This document shows positions 4,460 through 30,886 of a DNA stretch of 64,000 nt, piece by piece (positions within the stretch are counted from its first letter, which is position 1; each line of letters begins with the position of its first letter). The translations under genes and the position numbers were made by a program. Location: the sequence record LR756508.1; one strand, given 5' to 3'. The notes beneath the pieces were generated by a model that saw nothing but the letters and a program-made list of their open reading frames with translations, ran no database searches and was not told the DNA's origin.

Positions 4460-5090
4460 TCATCCGTTTTTTCGAAGCTTAGTTTCAAGCTTGCCAGTTC
4501 TTGGCTTCTGGTCTGTTGAAATTTTGATATGGGGAACTCTGCTTGTTCTTATTCCAGAGTCGACTCTTAGTTTGCCACTTGCCTTCTTCCTTTTATTCTT
4601 CTATCCAGTCCATCCTTACCTGTATAACTCCTCGAAGTTTTTCTCTAAAACGTTAAACAAAGAATTTAAAAAAAAGTATGGAAGCAAAGGCGTTCTTGCA
4701 AACTACAATGACGTTAAAGATTGGAAAGAAAAAGACGAACTCGAAGCCAAATTTTGGAGAAGCATAAAAAACAGAAAAGGTGAAGAAATTTACTGGAAAG
4801 AAGTTGAAGCTAGTTTTAACGAACCTGAGTATACGAAGTTCTATTTTCGTGGAATCTCTAGTCCAAACTATTTCATTCTTGAAGATATCTCTGGAGACCT
4901 ACATGAGGTTCATCACTGTGAGTTTCTGGACTTAACAAATAAAACCCATAAAGAAAGACTAAACGCCGAAAAACAAAAGGAGTTAAAACGAAAATTAAAA
5001 GAAGGAACTGTCTTCGAGAAAAGTCTACAAGAGCTCGAAGATAATTCAGTTAACGAGGTTTCATTCAAAAAGCTAAAAACAGGGGAGTGA
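4452..5090 (+). CDS. Hypothetical membrane protein
   Basis: Two N-terminal hydrophobic segments followed by a soluble domain. Confidence 0.6.
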   Translation: MLNHPFFRSLVSSLPVLGFWSVEILIWGTLLVLIPESTLSLPLAFFLLFFYPVHPYLYNSSKFFSKTLNKEFKKKYGSKGVLANYNDVKDWKEKDELEAKFWRSIKNRKGEEIYWKEVEASFNEPEYTKFYFRGISSPNYFILEDISGDLHEVHHCEFLDLTNKTHKERLNAEKQKELKRKLKEGTVFEKSLQELEDNSVNEVSFKKLKTGE

Positions 5091-6007
5091 GTACTTTTGA
5101 TGTCACCACAATTTATATGACCCAAGGCGTCCCTGCCTCTGGAAAAACCACATGGGCTCGCCAGAAGTTAAGAGAAGAGAATAGGATTAAACGCATCTGC
5201 AAGGATGATCTGCGTGACATGCTAGACAACGGAGAGTTTAACATGAAAAACGAACGTTATGTCTTGGATATGAGAAATGAAATGGTCGAAAGTGCACTTC
5301 TTCGAGGCAATGACATAATTCTTGATGATACAAACTTTAGCGACGACCATTGGAAAGCCATGCGAGATATTGCTAAACGCGTCGGAAATGTAAAAGTTGT
5401 TGAAATCTATTTTGAGGTAAGCCTCAAAGAAGCCAAGAAAAGAAATGAAAAAAGAAAAGAGACTGAAAGAGTTCCTGAACACATCATAGAAAACATGTTT
5501 GAAAAACACGTCAGGGGTGGAACTTCAGTATCGCAGCGAGAGGAGTTCTTTCCGAAAGCAGATCATCCTCATAGTCAAAGTCAAGCTGAAATTTTGACCG
5601 AGAGTTTTATAGTAGATTTGGATGGAACTTTAGCCTTGAACAATTCAGGTAGAGAATATAATGAGTTTCTTAAGGTTAAAGAAGATGACCCTAACATCCC
5701 TGTAGTAAGAATAGTGAATAAACTTTATGAGAGCTATGAGGATCTGGTTATCGTTACTGGACGTTCAGAGGAATGTAGAAAAGAATGCAGGGAGTGGTTA
5801 AATGTTTTTGAAATCCCTTTCGATCTGCTTTGTATGAGAGGCAAGCACGACTCGCGCCGAGACTCTGACGTAAAAAAGGAGATATACTGGGAAGTCATTC
5901 ACGATAGCCATTTTGTAAACTTTGTTATCGATGACAGGATGAGTGTAGTGAATATGTGGAGGTCACTTGGTATTCCTACTCTTCAAGTGTCTAAAGGCAC
6001 ATTTTAA
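5087..6007 (+). CDS. pseT: Polynucleotide 5'-kinase / 3'-phosphatase (T4 PseT-like)
   Basis: Walker A GVPASGKT, kinase DDTN, HAD DLDGT, VTGR and IDDR motifs; GTG start. Confidence 0.92.
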   Translation: MSTFDVTTIYMTQGVPASGKTTWARQKLREENRIKRICKDDLRDMLDNGEFNMKNERYVLDMRNEMVESALLRGNDIILDDTNFSDDHWKAMRDIAKRVGNVKVVEIYFEVSLKEAKKRNEKRKETERVPEHIIENMFEKHVRGGTSVSQREEFFPKADHPHSQSQAEILTESFIVDLDGTLALNNSGREYNEFLKVKEDDPNIPVVRIVNKLYESYEDLVIVTGRSEECRKECREWLNVFEIPFDLLCMRGKHDSRRDSDVKKEIYWEVIHDSHFVNFVIDDRMSVVNMWRSLGIPTLQVSKGTF

Positions 6008-9031: not shown

Positions 9032-9119
9032 AGAGAGAGATGCGAGATGGCTCTCGCTACTGACTTGAAATCAGTGGGAACCTGAAATATGGTTTGGGGA
9101 TCGAAACCTCCTCTCTCTG
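9032..9119 (+). tRNA. tRNA-Ser(TGA), non-canonical 8/4 cloverleaf with Sec-like D arm
   Basis: Acceptor AGAGAGAG/CTCTCTCT (8 bp), 6-bp D stem with TGGC loop, anticodon loop CT-TGA-AA, long V arm, 4-bp T stem with ATCGAAA loop, G73, no CCA. Confidence 0.85.
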
Positions 9120-9127
9120 CAACACAA

Positions 9128-9202
9128 GCGGGTGTAGATCAAGCGGCAGATCACTGGACTTCCATTCCAGAGGTTTTGTAGTTTCGACTACTACCACCCG
9201 CT
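9128..9202 (+). tRNA. tRNA-Gly(TCC)
   Basis: GCGGGTG/CACCCGC acceptor, loop CT-TCC-AT, TTCGACT T loop, U73, no CCA. Confidence 0.9.
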
Positions 9203-9208
9203 CTTTTA

Positions 9209-9264
9209 AGGCTGCTAACAGCAATTCTCCTTATCCTTTTTTTGGATAAAAGGAACGCAGCCTG
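9209..9264 (+). ncRNA. Armless tRNA-like element
   Basis: 7-bp stem AGGCTGC/GCAGCCT plus G, then TAACAGCAA, then a 6-bp stem TTATCC/GGATAA closing a 7-nt T7 loop; no D or T arm. Confidence 0.55.
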
Positions 9265-9287
9265 TTTTTAGTTTGATTAATAGTCTT

Positions 9288-9378
9288 GGAGGAGTGGCAG
9301 AGCTCGGTTTAATGCGTCTCACTGCTACTGAGATTGGCTTGAATCATAGTCACGCAGGTTCAAATCCTGCCTCCTCCG
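9288..9378 (+). tRNA. tRNA-Ser(GCT), canonical 7/5
   Basis: GGAGGAG/CTCCTCC acceptor, loop CT-GCT-AC, long V arm, GCAGG-TTCAAAT-CCTGC T arm, G73, no CCA. Confidence 0.92.
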
Positions 9379-9410
9379 CTTTTTCTGTCTAGAAAATAGT
9401 TACAATTTTT

Positions 9411-9713
9411 ATGAATGCGATAAGAAAAAAATTCTTGGACTTACGTAAGACCTGGATAAAAGAAACAGGTCACGTGGCTTCCCCCAAAGAGCGAGCAAAT
9501 CATCCTGCGTACCAGCAGATAATTGGAATGGGTCCGAAGGTGGTTCCCTTTTTGATTCGGGACCAAATTGAAAATAACACGCACTGGTTCTGGGCACTTC
9601 AATCCATCACAGGCGAGAACCCCATAGAGGAAAAACATGAAGGGTACGTTCAAAAAATGGCACAAGACTGGAATGAGTGGTGGGATGAGCAGTTGGCGCT
9701 GAGTGATTCTTAA
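9411..9713 (+). CDS. Conserved small helical hypothetical protein
   Basis: HPAYQQIIGMGPKVVPFL...HWFWALQSITGENP; GC-richer than the genome average. Confidence 0.7.
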   Translation: MNAIRKKFLDLRKTWIKETGHVASPKERANHPAYQQIIGMGPKVVPFLIRDQIENNTHWFWALQSITGENPIEEKHEGYVQKMAQDWNEWWDEQLALSDS

Positions 9714-9748
9714 GAAAGATAAAGTTTGAGGGTCTGCTCAACTATTAA

Positions 9749-10531
9749 GTGTATCTTTTAAAATGGTTTGAGAAAATAAATAAGATCTCGAATCTGATAA
9801 CCGAAGATGAGTATAAAACAAAGGATGGAAGAATTTTAAGTTTTAAGTTTGAAGAAAACGTAGAAAACACAGAAAGAAAAGGTTTTGTTATCCATAAACT
9901 TGACGCTTTTTTTGAGCCTCAATCAGAGGCTTTTTCTTCTGGTAAGCATGTTGGATATATTAAAGTAATTTACATACCCACTGAAAACGTTGACCAATAT
10001 TACCCAACAACGCTTCATTTTATCGATCTAGCAAAAGGATGGCAACTTTTAGACTATAAAAGTTTTTCCGAACCTGGAGAGTATCCAGGTCACGAAGAGT
10101 TTGCCAAAAAAGCTCATAATAGGGCAAGAAGTAACCCTTATAAGCGAGTTAAAGACTTTCCTGAATATAGTGAATATGAGAGTATAACTGATAAGAGATG
10201 GGAAGAACTTGCTAAATATTACAGAGATGAGATAAGAAAAACTTTCAAAGAAGACTTTGAAAGGTATTTAAACTATTACGTTGATAAACCTGTTGTTGAA
10301 TATATTAAAGTAAAAAAACAGTTCAGGAGGAACCGAGTGGGTTTTAATCTATATAAGAAAATGGCGAAAATTCTTGGAAATAAAGGAATGGTTCTTTATG
10401 CCAGTGGAACTCAAAGCGAGTATGCTGAGAAAGCCTGGAAAAAGCTTAGAGACGTTCTTCCAGTGAAAACCAAAAAGATTAAATTACCTTCGGGGGGCTC
10501 AGAAACGAGATATTTCATAGATTACCGATAA
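9749..10531 (+). CDS. Hypothetical protein with possible C-terminal GNAT-like fold
   Basis: VEYIKVKKQFRRNRVGFNLYKKM...ASGTQSEYAEKAW resembles GNAT motif A/B. Confidence 0.45.
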   Translation: MYLLKWFEKINKISNLITEDEYKTKDGRILSFKFEENVENTERKGFVIHKLDAFFEPQSEAFSSGKHVGYIKVIYIPTENVDQYYPTTLHFIDLAKGWQLLDYKSFSEPGEYPGHEEFAKKAHNRARSNPYKRVKDFPEYSEYESITDKRWEELAKYYRDEIRKTFKEDFERYLNYYVDKPVVEYIKVKKQFRRNRVGFNLYKKMAKILGNKGMVLYASGTQSEYAEKAWKKLRDVLPVKTKKIKLPSGGSETRYFIDYR

Positions 10532-10606
10532 ATATACTCTTTAACTTCAAATAAAAAAAAAACTGCATAATACTATGAAAATGAATTTTCATCTTGTGAG
10601 CAGTAG

Positions 10607-11038
10607 ATGAGAAACATCGCTGTAATTCTAATCTTTTCAATTCAATTATTAGGATTTACAGCGTTAGAGGGGGACAAAGAAGAAGCGTTTCCGAGATATT
10701 TTTATAAGGTAAATCCAAATCCAAAGATAACTGAAAACATAAATCACGAGGGCAAGGGGCATTTTTACGATCTTGTAAACATGAGCGGGGATACCTTAAA
10801 CGTATACGTCCAAGGAGTCGTCAAGGGCAGCGTCGAGCCTGACTATAAAAGAGCTTCTAAAGCCGATCTTGTAATATGGTGTTTTCCTCAAGAATATTCG
10901 CATCCAAGTCACGTCTTTCCTGAAGCACAAGGAAGAATCTTGATTCAGGAGAAAAATGGGGAAGTGGTAGTTGCAAGTGAATCATTTTTGAAGAGTAATG
11001 ACCTCTGGAACGGTCATAGCTATAAGATGTTAAATTAA
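10607..11038 (+). CDS. Hypothetical secreted protein
   Basis: N-terminal signal-peptide-like MRNIAVILIFSIQLLGFTA. Confidence 0.6.
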   Translation: MRNIAVILIFSIQLLGFTALEGDKEEAFPRYFYKVNPNPKITENINHEGKGHFYDLVNMSGDTLNVYVQGVVKGSVEPDYKRASKADLVIWCFPQEYSHPSHVFPEAQGRILIQEKNGEVVVASESFLKSNDLWNGHSYKMLN

Positions 11039-11072
11039 ATGCTAATCTCTTTGAACTGAAAGCATCTGCCCC

Positions 11073-12281
11073 ATGTCAACTTTTGAGGTCCCAATTAAGA
11101 AGGTTCAAATTAAAAATCATCCAAATGCTGATCGGCTTTCTATTGCAGAAATCCAAGGAACAGAATATCAATCTTTAGTTGGAATTGGAGAATACGAGTC
11201 GGGAGATCTTGTGGCTTATATTCCTGAAGATTCTATCGTTCCAGAGTGGATTCAAGAAAAGCTTGGAGTGAAAGGAAAGCTTGCAGGATCTGACAAAAAC
11301 CGAATTCGTAGTGTTCGTCTTAGGGGGGTATATTCGCAGGGGCTCTGCTTTCCTGTTGAGAATATAACCAACCATCCGGAGTTTGATGATGGATACTATA
11401 TTTTTCGTGAGAGTAGAGCGCTGGATGGAAGGCTCAGTGAGATCGATAAGAACTATAGCGTTGATCCGCTTTACAAAAAAGTGGAAGTTGGAGATGACGT
11501 TCAAGACTTTCTTGGAATTGAAAAGTATGAACCTCCTGTGCCCGTTCACATGAGCGGAGAAGTGTTTAACGCTCGGGGCAACACCTTGAAGTACGATATT
11601 GAGAACTTCCGAAAGTATCCTGATGTCCTTGAGGAAGGTGAGGAAGTTGTGGTAATGGAGAAGCTCCATGGCACCTTTTGCTGCATTGGTGTGGTTCCCC
11701 AAGACGAAGCTTCCAGTTCTTCGGGACGCCACATTGTTACATCTAAAGGTCTTTCAGCCAAAGGGCTGGCCTTGAAGCTAAATGAAAAGAATGAAGACAA
11801 TGTTTACATTCGTGCAGCCAGAAAATACAAGCTCTTAGAGAAGCTTTCGCAAAAAGAGGAAGGTTATTATTATATCCTCGGAGAAGTTTTTGGTCGAAAG
11901 ATTCAAGACCTTGAGTATGGAGCAGAAAGAGATGAGCTATTTTTCCGAGTCTTCGATATTTATAAAGGATCTCCAAAACGCGGGAGTGAAGGAAGATATC
12001 TCAACGACGATGAACTTGATGAAGAAATTAATAGGTTCGGTCTAAAAAGAGTTCCCGTTTTTTATCGGGGACCTTATTCAAAGGAAAACGTTTCAAGGTT
12101 TGTAAGCGGCCAGGAAACAGTTTCTGGGGAAGAAAATCACATGCGAGAGGGAGTTGTTGTTCGCCCTACAGAAGAGCGACATGTCGAAGAAAACCTTCCG
12201 ATGGGTGGTCGCGTTCAATTGAAGTGGAAGAGTGAAGAATACAAGCTCAGAAATGAAAAGACAGCTACAGAAAGACGTTAA
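11073..12281 (+). CDS. RNA ligase, DRB0094/Rnl2-related family with N-terminal tRNA-binding-like domain
   Basis: N-terminal HPNADRL...GDLVAYIPEDS; motifs EKLHG, GEVFG, FDIY, EGVV, LKWKS. Confidence 0.9.
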   Translation: MSTFEVPIKKVQIKNHPNADRLSIAEIQGTEYQSLVGIGEYESGDLVAYIPEDSIVPEWIQEKLGVKGKLAGSDKNRIRSVRLRGVYSQGLCFPVENITNHPEFDDGYYIFRESRALDGRLSEIDKNYSVDPLYKKVEVGDDVQDFLGIEKYEPPVPVHMSGEVFNARGNTLKYDIENFRKYPDVLEEGEEVVVMEKLHGTFCCIGVVPQDEASSSSGRHIVTSKGLSAKGLALKLNEKNEDNVYIRAARKYKLLEKLSQKEEGYYYILGEVFGRKIQDLEYGAERDELFFRVFDIYKGSPKRGSEGRYLNDDELDEEINRFGLKRVPVFYRGPYSKENVSRFVSGQETVSGEENHMREGVVVRPTEERHVEENLPMGGRVQLKWKSEEYKLRNEKTATERR

Positions 12282-12282
12282 T

Positions 12283-13685
12283 GAATGTTCAATTCATCCG
12301 GATGAATTGAACCACTACTATTTACAAGAAAGTATTATTATTCGAATTTTCTTTTAAATCACATGAAACTGACGAAAACGTTGAAGTTCAAACTTGAAGA
12401 CTTTTCAAGTCACGGAAGGTACGTCTTAAGCCAGACGCAGAGTCAGTTCCGAAAGTCCGTCAACTTTTATCTCCACCAAGTTGGACGCAAAGGCTCTACA
12501 AACGTAACCGACTACAAGAATGAGTATAAAAGAGCGAGAAACATATTTCAATTGAACTCAGCTTTGATTCAACAGTCGAAAAGGTTTGCGATAAACCAGT
12601 ACAAGTCTTACAAGAACAACGAAAGCAACGACAGTTTTCCACATTTCGAGTCGTTCGTTGACGTCCGTTACGATAACAGAACGATAACCTTCATCGATGA
12701 AAACGAAAAAACTCATGAGCTAAAAGTCACATTAGCCACAACCCAGAGCCGAGTCGAAGCCACGCTTCAAGGAGGAGAATATTGTTTCGAGGAGTTTCAA
12801 GCTGGCGAGTTTCAAGATGCCAGGCTCTATCGTCAAGATGGCGACTGGTATTTAAACGTTCATGTTCAAAGAGAGGCCGAAATTTCCAAAGCCAGAGATT
12901 CTGAGTTCTATATTGGTGTTGATCTTGGAGTCAACAACCTGGCAACAGTTGCAGTTCAAAACCGAAGGGGAGAAGTAATCGAGACAAAGTTTTTCGACGG
13001 GTCTTACGTGAGCGAAAAAAAGCGAAGGTTCAACGCCAAACGTCACGAATACATGCGGAAAGGTTTGTGGTCAAAGCTCAAAGAGACTCGCGGGAAGGAA
13101 AAGCGTTTCATCAAAGACGTCAACCACAAAATCTCAAAACACGTCAAAGATTTATGTGAGAAATACGAAAACTCAACTGTCGTATTAGAGAATCTTGACG
13201 GCATCCGTAACATCATAAATTACAACAGAAAACAGAATCGAAGATTGCACAACTGGAGCTTCAGTCAGCTCCAAGAGTTTATCATCTACAAAGCTCACGA
13301 AGCTGGAAGTTCTTATAGACGAGTTCCACCCTTCAACACTTCTCAAGTTTGTGGGAGTTGCTTCAACTCAATTTCCCGAAGCTCGGAGAACAGGGTTGTC
13401 GGAACTTGTGAAACCTGCAAGAAAGAGGTATTGAACGTGGATCTCAACGCAGCAGTTAATATTGTTCAACGTTTTTGGTATTACGTAATTCAGGACAACC
13501 TCGAAGACACTGTACCAGAAACTGAGCTACGTGAATTTAGCTCGGAGGGTTCGAAGCCTGAACTCCATCAAGGAAGCTTTGACGGCAAAGTCGACACCGC
13601 TGCGGTTGATTCAGAGAATCAACTCGTGTCGTCATTGAGCTTGAGCTTGCCTTGAAGCCCCCATCCTTGGACGGGAGTCATTCAC
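12283..13685 (+). mobile_element. tnpB-only IS200/IS605-family element 1
   Basis: TTAAT target 12278-12282, palindromic left end 12287-12312, right end GAAGCCCCCATCCTTGGACGGGAGTCATTCAC ending at 13685; no tnpA. Confidence 0.8.
12363..13655 (+). CDS. tnpB: RNA-guided endonuclease TnpB (Cas12f-like)
   Basis: RuvC I GVDLG, RuvC II VLENL, Zn finger CGSC/CETC, RuvC III NVDLNAA. Confidence 0.92.
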   Translation: MKLTKTLKFKLEDFSSHGRYVLSQTQSQFRKSVNFYLHQVGRKGSTNVTDYKNEYKRARNIFQLNSALIQQSKRFAINQYKSYKNNESNDSFPHFESFVDVRYDNRTITFIDENEKTHELKVTLATTQSRVEATLQGGEYCFEEFQAGEFQDARLYRQDGDWYLNVHVQREAEISKARDSEFYIGVDLGVNNLATVAVQNRRGEVIETKFFDGSYVSEKKRRFNAKRHEYMRKGLWSKLKETRGKEKRFIKDVNHKISKHVKDLCEKYENSTVVLENLDGIRNIINYNRKQNRRLHNWSFSQLQEFIIYKAHEAGSSYRRVPPFNTSQVCGSCFNSISRSSENRVVGTCETCKKEVLNVDLNAAVNIVQRFWYYVIQDNLEDTVPETELREFSSEGSKPELHQGSFDGKVDTAAVDSENQLVSSLSLSLP

Positions 13686-13734
13686 TTTATAAGCTTTTGG
13701 ATAAAGAAAAAAGTGATTTTTTTTAATCATCCTC

Positions 13735-13742
13735 TATTTATA
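13735..13742 (+). promoter_or_regulatory. Candidate phage promoter core TATTTATA
   Basis: TAYTTA motif recurring in intergenic gaps upstream of starts; this copy precedes the ORF-rnpB-tRNA unit. Confidence 0.4.
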
Positions 13743-13795
13743 GAACTTCTCATTGATTTTTACGAGATGGATAAGTTATACCATCAAAAAGTGAA

Positions 13796-14014
13796 ATGAA
13801 TAAAAACTTTTTCGAGGATCGAGACATGTCGGTTGTTGGTGAGAATGAGTTTAGGCGTATTAACGTTTTCCAACAGGAAGTAAAAGGTGTGGTCGTATTC
13901 GAAAGAAAGTTTTGGAAGATTTGGAAGGTCGATCAAACACTAACTTGGGGCCAGTTTGATGTGAGCAGTTATTTTTTGAACCTTATCGGACAATTTTACT
14001 TCAAACTCAAATAA
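13796..14014 (+). CDS. Hypothetical protein
   Basis: 72-aa ORF whose stop overlaps the start of the RNase P RNA. Confidence 0.55.
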   Translation: MNKNFFEDRDMSVVGENEFRRINVFQQEVKGVVVFERKFWKIWKVDQTLTWGQFDVSSYFLNLIGQFYFKLK

Positions 14015-14228
14015 GGTCTATTCCGTCGCTCTACGGCTCAAAAAGAAGGTTGTAGAGAGGAAGCTCTAGATACCACCGCTCGCTGCGGGAGAGTCTGTTG
14101 ACTCGCTCCTAACCGCTTCACTGGTACAATCCCAAACAGTCCAGAGGTGTGAGCGGCCAGAGTTCTGGACGGGTAGGGTGCGCCGAGATAAATGATGGAT
14201 TGACACAGAATCTAGGCTATTAGACCTT
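14013..14228 (+). ncRNA. rnpB: Minimal RNase P RNA (~216 nt)
   Basis: P1 AAGGTCTA/TAGACCTT, P2 TCCGTC/GATGGA, P3 CTCTAC/GTAGAG, P4 AGC(T)CTAGA/TCTAGGCT with bulged U, CR-I GAGGAAG, CR-IV AGATAAATGA, CR-V ACAGAA. Confidence 0.88.
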
Positions 14229-14236
14229 TTAAAGAA

Positions 14237-14324
14237 AGAGGGTAAACTAGTGTTTGGCCTGCTAGGACAGACTCGAAATCTGTGCGTACCAAACTGGTAT
14301 GTGGTTCAAATCCACTGCCCTCTG
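14237..14324 (+). tRNA. tRNA-Ser(CGA), 8/4 cloverleaf
   Basis: Acceptor AGAGGGTA/TGCCCTCT (8 bp), T stem GTGG/CCAC (4 bp) with TTCAAAT loop, loop CT-CGA-AA, long V arm, G73, no CCA. Confidence 0.88.
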
Positions 14325-14419
14325 CTAAAAAAGTTGGTTCTAAAACCAAAAAAATAACAGTTTCTGTTATTTAAAGAATGGTAAACTGGTAGAATCGATA
14401 TGCATTTTTCAATATAAAA

Positions 14420-15245
14420 TTGAGTAGCTATAATTGTTAAATGTAAGTGTGGGAAAACGTTTAAGAATAAAGCAGGGTTGGGCAGCCATCAAAATTGGTG
14501 TGATGGAACAGGGTTGAGTTCAAATAAAAGTAAAAACAAAAAAGAGAAGAAGAAAGAGAAAATTGAAACTGAAAAATTATGTAACTATGGTTGCGGAGAA
14601 AAAGCCAAATGGAGTATGAAGAATGGAAATTTGTCCTGTTCCAAATATTCAGCTCAGTGTGAAGCTTTAAAAGAAAAGAACAGTAAAGGTTTAAAAGCTG
14701 CTTGGAAAGAAAATCCTTGAAGCAGTGGAGGTGATACTGGAGGCGGGTGGAATAAAGGAAAAACTTATGAGGAAGTCTACGGGGAAGATAGAGCCGAAAA
14801 AGTTAAAGACAAAATTTCTAATACACTTAAAAATAATGAAGAAAACTCATGGGATAAATTAAGTCCAAAGGAGAGGAAAAAAGCAGAAAAGAAACTGAGT
14901 GAGAATACAGGTGGTTATAGAAAAAAAGGTGGTAGAGGAAATGGATACTGGTACGAATCTGAAGTAAATGGGGAGATATGGCTTGATAGTAGTTATGAAT
15001 TAGCTTATGCTAAGTGGTTAGATAAAAACTTTGATAACTGGAAGAGAAACACATCCAAATTTGAATACTCTTTTAAAAATAAAAAGAAAAATTATATTCC
15101 CGATTTTTATATACCGAATAAAGAGGTTTATATTGAAATAAAAGGATATAAAACGGAACAAGATGAAGCTAAATGGAGGGATTTTCCGAAACAGTTAGAG
15201 GTTCTATACAAAGAGGACTTAATTGAAATCGGATGTGATTTATAG
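14420..15245 (+). pseudogene. Disrupted PD-(D/E)XK homing-type endonuclease (zinc finger + NUMOD3-like + nuclease)
   Basis: One frame runs 14424-15245 (KCKCGKTF..GLGSHQNWC; WNKGKTYEEVYG; DSSYE...YIPDFY...IEIKG) with an in-frame TGA at 14718-14720 and no canonical in-frame start before the zinc finger. Confidence 0.75.
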
Positions 15246-15332
15246 AGGGTAAAGCGGACAGGCGTGCCGCCGCTGCTTGGAAAGCAGTTGGCACCTGGAA
15301 CATGGTGTGGAATTCGAGTTTCCTGCCCTCTG
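15244..15332 (+). tRNA. tRNA-Ser(GGA), 8/4 cloverleaf
   Basis: Acceptor AGAGGGTA/TGCCCTCT (8 bp), T stem GGAA/TTCC (4 bp) with TTCGAGT loop, loop TT-GGA-AA, long V arm, G73, no CCA. Confidence 0.88.
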
Positions 15333-30433: not shown

Positions 30434-30877
30434 GGGACTGATACGGCTTCGACATCTTGTATGGAGTTGGAGCCACTACCTGGCGCAACATATGAGCGCC
30501 GTAAAGAAATTGAATATGAATCTATAACTGGCGTAAACAACGCTGATTACGAGTCTGCTGGATTTACGGCAGAGGACTTCGCACAGATGGACGGCGAAAG
30601 CCTCTATCATGGTAGCGAGCGTAAGCCTGCTGCTGTGTAAGTGAAGTTTTGGACTTGATTTAAAAGTCCACTCCATCGTTCCCCAACGCAGATAAGGATC
30701 GAACGGTGTCATATTTATCTGCTTGAGTAGACTGGCTGGCATCTGCCATTCTGCCGACATTTGAAGATGCCTGCTCCGTTTTGTGAATTTTGGGAGCTAA
30801 AACTAAATTCACTATGGTAGTGAACAATGGCAATAGCAAAGACAAGATGGACTCGGGTTCGACTCCCGACAGTTCCA
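30434..30877 (+). ncRNA. ssrA: tmRNA
   Basis: GGGACTG/CAGTTCC acceptor with G3-U70, A discriminator, 5' GATACGGCTTCGAC, P2 ATCTTGT/ACAAGAT, T arm TCGGG-TTCGACT-CCCGA; tag frame 30530-30640. Confidence 0.93.
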
Positions 30878-30886
30878 GATTCCAGG

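What the first reader, a model, noticed from the sequence alone, without database searches (positions are those of the whole stretch)
9032..15332. Three 8/4-cloverleaf serine tRNAs (UGA, CGA, GGA) plus a canonical Ser(GCU): a full serine set
Seen: 9032-9119, 14237-14324 and 15244-15332 each fold with an 8-bp acceptor and 4-bp T stem (7/5 forces a mismatch), an extended D stem, long V arm and G73. Ser(UGA) has a Sec-like 6-bp D stem with a 4-nt loop and an ATCGAAA T loop. With Ser(GCT), all six Ser codons are covered, and 4 of the 5 tRNAs in the window are Ser. Known: 8/4 Ser tRNAs are a rare class reported in some bacteria and phages (Mukai and colleagues); some toxins such as MenT3 prefer tRNA-Ser. 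Inference: reshaped tRNAs that resist a host anti-tRNA-Ser defence.
Basis: partly seen in the sequence, partly recalled or inferred. Interest (0 to 1): 0.8.

Follow-up and report, generated by a model that had tools for sequence, protein, structure and literature searches.

The report
Odd-shaped serine tRNAs in huge phage
A 484-kb phage from Atacama salt carries three real serine tRNAs of the rare but already published "8/4" shape plus one normal one, enough to read all six serine codons. The more surprising item is a miniature RNase P RNA directly upstream of one of them.

Summary
Windows 9032-9119 (UGA), 14237-14324 (CGA) and 15244-15332 (GGA) are tRNAs with an 8-bp acceptor stem, a 4-bp T stem, a long variable arm and G73. 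A covariance model built only from other phages' 8/4 serine tRNAs ranks them as the top three hits in the whole phage genome (60-64 bits; next best 29.5). With the canonical Ser(GCU), all six serine codons are covered.

They are homologues of the (8/4) tRNA-Ser / allo-tRNA class of Mukai et al. 2017, already reported in phages. This makes them a new member of a known kind.

The apparent serine bias comes from where the window was cut. The phage (LR756508.1, 484 kb) has at least 34 tRNAs.

The defence-evasion inference is untested and gets little support:
- The shape is an inherited family trait.
- The anticodon loops are canonical.
- The long variable arm that MenT3 recognises is kept.
- A T4-type Pnkp and an RNA ligase do sit in the same island.

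Found in passing: a ~226-nt RNase P RNA lacking the specificity domain ends one base before tRNA-Ser(CGA). At least 26 more occur in phage tRNA clusters, and I found no description of them in the literature I could search.

The parts
9032..9119 (+). tRNA-Ser(UGA), 8/4 cloverleaf. Acceptor AGAGAGAG/CUCUCUCU, 6-bp D stem with UGGC tetraloop, 6-bp anticodon stem, 20-nt variable arm, T arm GGGG-AUCGAAA-CCUC, G73, no encoded CCA.
   Evidence: ARAGORN draws it as 8/4. MFE fold. Model R1 gives 59.9 bits.
9128..9203 (+). tRNA-Gly(UCC), canonical 7/5, 8 nt downstream of Ser(UGA).
   Evidence: ARAGORN. Rfam tRNA 55.7 bits.
9288..9379 (+). tRNA-Ser(GCU), canonical 7/5 class II tRNA with U8 and G73. Reads AGC and AGU.
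   Evidence: ARAGORN. Rfam tRNA 56.5 bits. Not hit by the 8/4 model at E<=1.
14237..14324 (+). tRNA-Ser(CGA), 8/4. Acceptor AGAGGGUA/UGCCCUCU, T arm GUGG-UUCAAAU-CCAC, 17-nt variable arm, G73.
   Evidence: ARAGORN. MFE fold. Model R1 gives 59.9 bits.
15244..15332 (+). tRNA-Ser(GGA), 8/4. Same acceptor stem as Ser(CGA), T arm GGAA-UUCGAGU-UUCC, D stem of 6 bp with one bulge and a 4-nt loop, G73. Missed by ARAGORN and by Rfam.
   Evidence: MFE fold. Best hit of model R1 in the whole phage genome, 64.3 bits, E 3.8e-10.
14010..14235 (+). Miniature RNase P RNA (catalytic domain only). P1, P2, P3, the P4 pseudoknot with the conserved bulged U, J18/2 (AGAUAAAUG) and ACAGAA are kept. The specificity domain is replaced by a ~45-nt stub. 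It ends 1 nt before tRNA-Ser(CGA).
   Evidence: Rfam RNaseP_bact_a 49 bits (gathering score 100), E 5.6e-14. P4 pairs 7 of 7, read. Family evidence.
5087..6007 (+). Polynucleotide kinase-phosphatase (T4 Pnkp type: P-loop kinase plus HAD phosphatase).
   Evidence: Pfam HAD_PNKP 5.9e-38 and AAA_33 2e-22. phrog_505 polynucleotide kinase 9.8e-77.
11073..12281 (+). RNA ligase.
   Evidence: Pfam RNA_ligase 7.2e-25 and PHA02142 OB fold 6.3e-11. Closest annotated relatives are RNA ligases of Caulobacter and Brevundimonas jumbo phages, about 35% identity.
12363..13655 (+). TnpB / Cas12f-like (IS605 OrfB) gene, a mobile-element insertion within the tRNA island.
   Evidence: Pfam Cas12f1-like_TNB 3e-14, OrfB_IS605 2.2e-08, RuvC_1 1.2e-4.
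14478..15243 (+). Endonuclease-like ORF between Ser(CGA) and Ser(GGA), interrupted by an in-frame TGA at 14718-14720. Probably a homing-type endonuclease, possibly decayed.
   Evidence: Translation. The downstream piece matches phrog_15137 endonuclease, 6.8e-12.

Best explanation
The three genes encode working serine isoacceptors of the published (8/4) tRNA-Ser / allo-tRNA family.

Shown here:
- They have the family's fold and sequence: an 8-bp acceptor, a 4-bp T stem, a long variable arm and G73.
- Two of the three have a Sec-like D arm.
- Their anticodons are UGA, CGA and GGA. With the canonical tRNA-Ser(GCU) these cover UCN and AGY, all six of which the phage uses.
- They sit on the coding strand inside the tRNA-rich part of a 484-kb phage genome that holds at least 34 tRNAs.
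- No SerRS is encoded.

Inferred:
- The host SerRS charges them through the variable arm and G73, which do not depend on the 7/5 versus 8/4 split.
- The 12-bp acceptor/T helix is kept, so EF-Tu and the ribosome accept them, as Mukai et al. showed for family members in E. coli.
- They therefore let the phage keep decoding serine independently of the host tRNA pool, as part of a near-complete phage tRNA set.
- The 8/4 geometry is inherited from a mobile tRNA lineage that travels in phage tRNA arrays. It was not newly evolved in this phage.
- Ser(CGA) is probably co-transcribed with the miniature RNase P RNA that ends one base upstream, so cleavage at the tRNA 5' end would also release that RNA's 3' end.
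- The neighbouring Pnkp and RNA ligase would mend tRNAs cut by host nucleases.
For: Fold and non-randomness:
- MFE folds and the ARAGORN 8/4 drawing.
- An external-only covariance model puts the three loci at 60-64 bits, against 29.5 or less for every other tRNA in the genome.
- Covariation: 98.5% of cells paired versus 45-57% for slid registers.
- RNAalifold predicts 8/4 unprompted.

Family membership:
- The same acceptor stem and split occur in phage contigs and in bacterial or mobile tRNA arrays and Acidobacteria.
- The family definition and its activity in E. coli are in PMC5389517.

Codon need:
- Serine is 7.75% of codons and all six are used, 10.5-27% each.

Genome context:
- 31 tRNAs by ARAGORN, plus the uncalled Ser(GGA) and 2 more by Rfam, all on the + strand.
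- No SerRS homologue by tblastn (best E 0.11).
- Pnkp, RNA ligase and the mini RNase P RNA are adjacent.
Against: - No expression, aminoacylation or structure-probing data exist. The phage is uncultured and its host is unknown.
- The Ser(UGA) T loop (A54, A60) and the lack of U8 are unusual, and their effect on elbow formation and EF-Tu binding is untested.
- Mukai et al. found that some allo-tRNAs were inactive in translation.
- 'Inherited trait' does not explain why the 8/4 lineage persists in phages.
Confidence: 0.75

Rival explanations
1. The 8/4 shape was selected because it makes phage serine tRNAs poor substrates for a host enzyme that targets tRNA-Ser, such as a nucleotidyltransferase toxin or a nuclease. 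Translation would then continue when host tRNA-Ser is inactivated.
For: - Phage tRNAs that bypass tRNA-targeting defences are documented (PMC10264068, PMC11555353, PMC11464382).
- A Pnkp and RNA ligase repair pair lies in the same island, which points to tRNA damage as a real pressure.
- All three UCN isoacceptors have the odd shape.
Against: - The geometry is shared with bacterial allo-tRNAs and tRNA arrays and is not specific to this phage.
- The anticodon loops are canonical.
- The long variable arm, which is MenT3's determinant (PMC11162799), is retained.
- Ser(GCU) is canonical 7/5.
- No tRNA-Ser-specific defence is known for the unknown host.
Confidence: 0.15
2. The 8/4 tRNAs and the specificity-domain-less RNase P RNA form a matched phage maturation system. 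An enzyme that does not read the T-loop/D-loop elbow would tolerate, or prefer, tRNAs with non-canonical T arms and D arms.
For: - The mini RNase P RNA abuts Ser(CGA).
- 8/4 Ser tRNAs also occur in mini-RNase-P loci L168, L192 and L223.
- Ser(UGA) has a non-canonical T loop and a tetraloop D arm.
Against: - In other phages the tRNA directly downstream of the mini RNase P RNA is Thr, Lys, Met, Ile or Leu, so there is no specificity for 8/4 tRNAs.
- 8/4 keeps the 12-bp helix that ordinary RNase P measures.
- Of the 130 viral loci fetched by the tRNA acceptor-stem scans, which include the external 8/4 Ser loci, only one (L131) had a mini RNase P RNA in its flanks.
- No baseline is available to test for enrichment.
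Confidence: 0.1
3. They are not used in translation. They would be tRNA-like relics, regulatory RNAs or decoys, as proposed for some allo-tRNAs found next to toxin-antitoxin genes.
For: - Mukai et al. found inactive allo-tRNA variants and links to toxin-antitoxin loci.
- Standard tRNA finders miss them.
Against: - All stems are intact and differ between copies by compensatory changes.
- The anticodons are exactly the three needed to complete serine decoding.
- The anticodon loops are canonical, with U33 and A37.
Confidence: 0.05

Closest known systems
(8/4) tRNA-Ser / (8/4) allo-tRNA (Mukai et al., Nucleic Acids Res 2017, PMC5389517)
   Same: - 12-bp acceptor branch split 8/4, long variable arm and G73.
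- Sec-like D arm in two of the three.
- Serine anticodons.
- Located in phage tRNA clusters.
- Missed by the general tRNA model but weakly seen by the tRNA-Sec model.
- Near-identical acceptor stem sequence to Acidobacteria allo-tRNAs.
   Different: - Three 8/4 isoacceptors (UGA, CGA, GGA) plus a canonical GCU sit together in one complete 484-kb halite phage.
- Ser(CGA) has a near-canonical D arm.
- Ser(UGA) carries an AUCGAAA T loop.
- A mini RNase P RNA and tRNA repair genes are adjacent.
Bacterial tRNA-Sec (selC)
   Same: 8-bp acceptor stem, 6-bp D stem with tetraloop, 6-bp anticodon stem (in Ser(UGA)), long variable arm, G73, charged first by SerRS.
   Different: - The anticodon is not UCA.
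- The T stem has 4 bp rather than 5, giving a 12-bp helix rather than 13 bp, so they should be EF-Tu compatible.
- Rfam tRNA-Sec scores only 16 bits against a gathering score of 47.
Phage T4 tRNA cluster with Pnkp and Rnl1 repair, and the Seg homing endonuclease inside the cluster (from established knowledge)
   Same: Phage tRNA genes lie with a polynucleotide kinase-phosphatase and an RNA ligase nearby, and an endonuclease gene is inserted between tRNA genes.
   Different: - The tRNAs here are non-canonical in shape.
- The ligase is closest to those of Caulobacter and Brevundimonas jumbo phages.
- No anticodon nuclease target is known for this host.
Type T RNase P RNA of Pyrobaculum, and engineered catalytic-domain-only bacterial P RNAs (for the adjacent RNA)
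   Same: About 200 nt, catalytic domain retained, specificity domain lost.
   Different: - Bacterial type A core sequence.
- Encoded by phages inside tRNA clusters, often directly upstream of a tRNA.
- No cognate protein gene was found in this phage.

Membership tests
(8/4) tRNA-Ser / allo-tRNA (Mukai 2017) | 12-bp acceptor branch made of an 8-bp acceptor stem and a 4-bp T stem | tested here: met
   MFE folds. ARAGORN 8/4 drawing for UGA. A 7/5 register gives U.C, U.U and U.U at 49:65. Covariation across 51 members.
(8/4) tRNA-Ser / allo-tRNA (Mukai 2017) | Long variable arm and a G73 (or U73) discriminator | tested here: met
   Variable arms of 17-20 nt with 4-5-bp stems, and G73 in all three.
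(8/4) tRNA-Ser / allo-tRNA (Mukai 2017) | Sec-like D arm (long stem, tetraloop) | tested here: inconclusive
   Clear for UGA (6 bp plus UGGC). GGA has 6 bp with one bulge and a 4-nt loop. CGA has 4 Watson-Crick pairs plus 2 possible G.U pairs and a 7-11-nt loop.
(8/4) tRNA-Ser / allo-tRNA (Mukai 2017) | Sequence and structure homology to other members | tested here: met
   A model built from 13 external phage members scores 59.9-64.3 bits. All other tRNAs of the genome score 29.5 or less.
(8/4) tRNA-Ser / allo-tRNA (Mukai 2017) | Serine anticodon (this defines the tRNA-Ser subgroup) | tested here: met
   UGA, CGA and GGA in 7-nt loops with U33 and A37.
(8/4) tRNA-Ser / allo-tRNA (Mukai 2017) | Serylation by SerRS and activity in translation | not testable with these tools
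   Needs aminoacylation and suppression assays. No phage SerRS was found, so the host enzyme would be required.
Canonical bacterial class II tRNA-Ser (7/5) | 7-bp acceptor stem, U8, 5-bp T stem, and a match to the general tRNA model | tested here: not met
   Position 8 is G, A, A. There is a mismatch at 49:65. Rfam RF00005 gives no hit even at E<=10. The window's Ser(GCU) does meet these criteria.
tRNA-Sec (selC) | UCA anticodon, 13-bp acceptor/T helix (8/5), Rfam RF01852 score | tested here: not met
   The anticodons are serine anticodons, the helix is 12 bp, and RF01852 scores 16.2 bits against a gathering score of 47.
Bacterial RNase P RNA, type A (adjacent RNA at 14010-14235) | Conserved catalytic core: CR-I GAGGAA, the P4 pseudoknot with bulged U, J18/2 AGAURAAUG, CR-V ACAGAA, and P1-P3 | tested here: met
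   Rfam alignment spans the model end to end. P4 pairs 7 of 7 with the bulged U, although the model does not score P4. 26 further non-redundant phage loci show P4 covariation.
Bacterial RNase P RNA, type A (adjacent RNA at 14010-14235) | Specificity domain (P7-P14) and the Rfam gathering score | tested here: not met
   About 110 model positions are replaced by about 25-45 nt. Score is 49 bits against a gathering score of 100. It works like a catalytic-domain-only P RNA and is not a standard type A member.
T4-type tRNA repair pair (Pnkp plus RNA ligase) | Bifunctional kinase-phosphatase and an RNA ligase nucleotidyltransferase domain | tested here: met
   Pfam HAD_PNKP and AAA_33, and RNA_ligase. 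phrog_505 at 9.8e-77. Activity on cleaved tRNA was not tested.

The most novel reading that the evidence does not exclude
This phage, and many others, run their own tRNA supply line. It would combine non-canonical 8/4 serine tRNAs, a phage-encoded catalytic-domain-only RNase P ribozyme transcribed in one piece with them, and Pnkp/ligase repair.

In this reading the 8/4 tRNAs and the specificity-domain-less ribozyme are co-adapted. Phage tRNAs would mature, and stay usable, when host tRNA processing or host tRNA-Ser is shut down or attacked.

The mini RNase P RNA family by itself appears undescribed in the literature I could search.
Probability: 0.15. Interest if true: 0.85.

Novelty: new member of a known kind. 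Interest (0 to 1): 0.5.

Why it matters
The tRNAs give a clean, complete-genome example of a phage that decodes a six-codon family with three non-canonical tRNAs and one canonical tRNA. They also show that standard annotation under-counts phage tRNAs: ARAGORN missed one of three here and all four in two bacterial arrays, and Rfam missed all three.

The acceptor stem they share with Acidobacteria allo-tRNAs ties phage serine tRNAs and bacterial 'missense' allo-tRNAs into one mobile lineage.

The larger point is the neighbouring RNA. If the ~200-nt RNase P RNAs in phage tRNA clusters are active, phages carry their own minimal ribozyme for tRNA 5' maturation. That would be a natural bacterial-type counterpart of the Pyrobaculum type T enzyme and a compact system for studying RNase P without a specificity domain.

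Tried and rejected
- The search for related loci with the RNA ligase in viral contigs found no relative.
- blastn of the 7.5-kb island and of the RNase P plus tRNA stretch against GenBank phages hit only the source record. Comparison by synteny was therefore not possible.
- The first two-anchor pattern scan gave 10 hits. Eight were chance matches with no tRNA fold, seven of them copies of one repeated non-tRNA sequence.
- nhmmer with the mini RNase P RNA against all fetched loci found only itself. The family was reached by a motif pattern plus a P4-pairing filter instead.
- The promoter scan was at chance level (15 found against 14.1 expected).
- Genome-wide stop-codon recoding was rejected. 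All three stops are used, and code 11 gives 85-95% ORF coverage in most 50-kb pieces (65-76% in the three pieces with the lowest coverage). This is despite an amber-suppressor tRNA.
- A phage SerRS or RnpA was looked for by tblastn with E. coli queries and not found. This is weak evidence for RnpA, which is short and divergent.
- Serine enrichment was rejected once the whole genome was scanned.
- A tRNA-Sec identity was rejected on anticodon, helix length and RF01852 score.


Full report
**Source.** The window is bases 62001-126000 of LR756508.1, an unannotated 'uncultured phage' record of 484,177 bp. The supplement of Al-Shayeb et al. 2020 lists it as QS-7_PHAGE_COMPLETE_CIR-CU-CL_40_25. It is a circular, manually curated genome from Atacama salt crust. 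Its host is not assigned: 3.8% of genes look like Bacteroidetes and 3.0% like Proteobacteria. There are no N runs, and G+C is 38.5%.

**Checking the observation.**
- ARAGORN finds Ser(tga) 9032-9120, Gly(tcc) 9128-9203, Ser(gct) 9288-9379, Ser(cga) 14237-14325 and a tmRNA. It does not find the claimed Ser(GGA).
- The Rfam tRNA model hits only Gly and Ser(GCU), even at E<=10.
- Unconstrained folding still gives an 8-bp acceptor stem and a 4-bp T stem for all three candidates.
- ARAGORN's own drawing of Ser(UGA) is 8/4.
- Read by hand, a 7/5 register leaves U.C, U.U and U.U at 49:65. Position 8 is G, A, A, whereas by my count about 27 of the 29 ARAGORN-called tRNAs outside this class have U8.
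- All three have G73, variable arms of 17-20 nt, canonical 7-nt anticodon loops and no encoded CCA.

**Independent test.**
- Pattern scans of IMG/VR for the acceptor-stem sequence returned many phage tRNAs. With the geometry fixed, they split into two groups. Canonical ones have U8 unpaired and 49:65 paired (68 of 87). 8/4 ones have position 8 paired and 49:65 mismatched (8 clear, 11 ambiguous).
- I aligned 13 external 8/4 members. RNAalifold predicted the 8/4 fold unprompted.
- A covariance model built from them ranked Ser(GGA) 64.3, Ser(CGA) 59.9 and Ser(UGA) 59.9 bits as the top three hits in the whole 489 kb searched. The next hit was 29.5 bits. The gene that ARAGORN missed is therefore the best match.
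- On 51 members, the 8/4 structure pairs 98.5% of cells against 45-57% for slid registers. All four T-stem pairs covary, and the eighth acceptor pair is GC:41 and AU:5.
- One caveat: the scan patterns fixed pairs 1-6 and, in the genome scan, R8/Y. The T stem and the 49:65 mismatch were not preselected.

**What they are.**
- Mukai et al. 2017 defined allo-tRNAs and (8/4) tRNA-Ser by exactly these features. They reported (8/4) tRNA-Ser in bacteriophages, proteobacteria and rumen Clostridia, and showed that family members are serylated and translate in E. coli.
- A scan of 185,579 species' genomes for AGAGGGTR...YRCCCTCTG found 52 loci.
- Most are Acidobacteria allo-tRNAs with non-serine anticodons (GCG, GCC, GUC). 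Others lie in dense tRNA arrays.
- Two Gammaproteobacteria MAG contigs (L265, L289) each carry four tandem 8/4 tRNAs. In L265 the anticodons are UGA, CGA, GGA and GCU. ARAGORN called none of the eight.
- Three of these eight share the GGGG-AUCRNGA-CCUC T arm of the window's Ser(UGA).
- The window's genes are thus homologous members of a known, mobile tRNA lineage.

**Context.**
- The serine bias comes from where the window was cut. The whole genome has 31 ARAGORN tRNAs, the uncalled Ser(GGA) and at least two more by Rfam. All are on the + strand, in record positions 1-77 kb and 434-482 kb.
- Serine is 7.75% of codons and all six codons are used. No genome-wide stop recoding is seen.
- No SerRS homologue is encoded, so the host enzyme must charge these tRNAs.
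- The island also holds a T4-type polynucleotide kinase-phosphatase (5087-6007), an RNA ligase (11073-12281), a TnpB gene (12363-13655), and an endonuclease-like ORF with an in-frame TGA between Ser(CGA) and Ser(GGA).

**Mechanism.** The best-supported reading is ordinary decoding.
- SerRS recognises the variable arm and G73.
- The preserved 12-bp acceptor/T helix suits EF-Tu.
- The four tRNAs make serine decoding independent of the host pool, as part of a near-complete phage tRNA set.

**The defence-evasion idea stays possible but gets little support.**
- The shape is inherited rather than new.
- The anticodon loops carry no escape-type changes (compare PMC10264068).
- The variable arm that MenT3 uses to select tRNA-Ser is retained (PMC11162799).
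- One serine tRNA is canonical.
- The repair genes are the only positive hint.

**Side finding: a miniature RNase P RNA.**
- At 14010-14235 the permissive Rfam scan finds RNaseP_bact_a end to end at 49 bits (gathering score 100; E 5.6e-14). The specificity domain is deleted.
- The P4 pseudoknot, which the model does not score, forms 7 of 7 pairs around the conserved bulged U. Five of those pairs are changed compensatorily relative to the consensus.
- The RNA ends one base before tRNA-Ser(CGA).
- A motif scan of IMG/VR plus a P4 test gave a bimodal result. 27 loci (26 after removing one duplicate sequence) had 7 of 7 pairs and the bulged U, with many different P4 sequences. The rest had 0-5 pairs.
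- Five of ten of these loci tested match RNaseP_bact_a at 44-63 bits over 197-214 nt, and a sixth matches the archaeal RNase P model at 36.7 bits.
- Most sit in tRNA clusters on the same strand. In 9 of the 27, a tRNA starts 16-24 nt after the core, as it does here.
- In the alignment, 22 of 25 predicted pairs show compensatory change.
- Clear 8/4 Ser tRNAs co-occur in three of these loci (L168, L192, L223), but the downstream tRNA type varies.
- I found no paper in the held library that describes phage-encoded RNase P RNA. Subscription journals are not covered.

**Verdict.**
- The tRNAs are a new member of a known kind.
- The defence inference is unsupported.
- The adjacent mini RNase P RNA family is the item most worth following up.

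Noticed in passing
window 14010-14235 (+); also L144, L159, L161, L162, L165, L167, L168, L174, L181, L185, L191, L192, L196, L197, L207, L208, L211, L217, L218, L220, L222, L223, L233, L237, L243, L245, L247: A ~200-226-nt RNase P RNA with the bacterial type A catalytic core but no specificity domain, embedded in phage tRNA clusters and often directly upstream of a tRNA. P4 with the bulged U covaries across 27 loci, including the window. Scores are below the Rfam gathering threshold, so routine annotation does not see it. No description was found in the searchable literature.
   Followed up: yes
window 5087-6007 and 11073-12281: A T4-type polynucleotide kinase-phosphatase and an RNA ligase flank the serine tRNA genes. 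This is a candidate tRNA repair pair.
   Followed up: partly
window 12363-13655; L002 12878-13102 (record 12878-13102): A TnpB (IS605 OrfB / Cas12f-like) gene lies inside the tRNA island. A HEARO RNA (144 bits, the RNA partner of IscB-type nucleases) lies elsewhere in the phage. The genome therefore carries two kinds of RNA-guided transposon nuclease elements.
   Followed up: no
window 14478-15243: An endonuclease-like ORF between two tRNA genes that share an identical acceptor stem. An in-frame TGA at 14718-14720 splits it into pieces of 80 and 174 codons, and only the second piece matches phage endonuclease families.
   Followed up: partly
window 30434-30880; L010 18804-18915 (record 414804-414915): A phage tmRNA (Rfam 72 bits). 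ARAGORN's tag peptide for it, GRRKPLSW, is unusually short and may be miscalled. There is also a second, 112-nt match to the tmRNA model (58 bits).
   Followed up: no
L010 38334-38405 (record 434334-434405): An amber-suppressor tRNA (anticodon CUA). ARAGORN draws it as 8/4, but it has U8 and scores 43.5 bits with the canonical tRNA model. The genome shows no general TAG recoding.
   Followed up: partly
L265 6811-7185; L289 136-405: Gammaproteobacteria MAG contigs (Thiodiazotropha, Chromatiaceae) hold dense tRNA arrays. Each contains four tandem 8/4 tRNAs (anticodons UGA, CGA, GGA and GCU in L265), and ARAGORN missed all of them. Three of the eight share the AUCRNGA T loop of the window's Ser(UGA).
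   Followed up: partly
L025 1698-1780 (-); L223 10074-10145 (-): Other 8/4 tRNAs in phage contigs. One has a UCA anticodon and G73, so it is a possible opal suppressor or Sec-like tRNA. The other is a 72-nt tRNA with a GUC anticodon and G73.
   Followed up: no
window 9100-9106: The Ser(UGA) T loop is AUCGAAA (A54, A60). From my own knowledge, not tested here, this is the pattern typical of eukaryotic initiator tRNAs. Its meaning in a bacterial system is unknown.
   Followed up: no
L002 12382-12461; L002 3822-3896 and 25067-25146: A tRNA-Glu(UUC) that ARAGORN draws as 8/4, although 7/5 with a G.U pair is also possible. Two further tRNAs were found only by Rfam. The phage's tRNA count depends on the tool used.
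   Followed up: no
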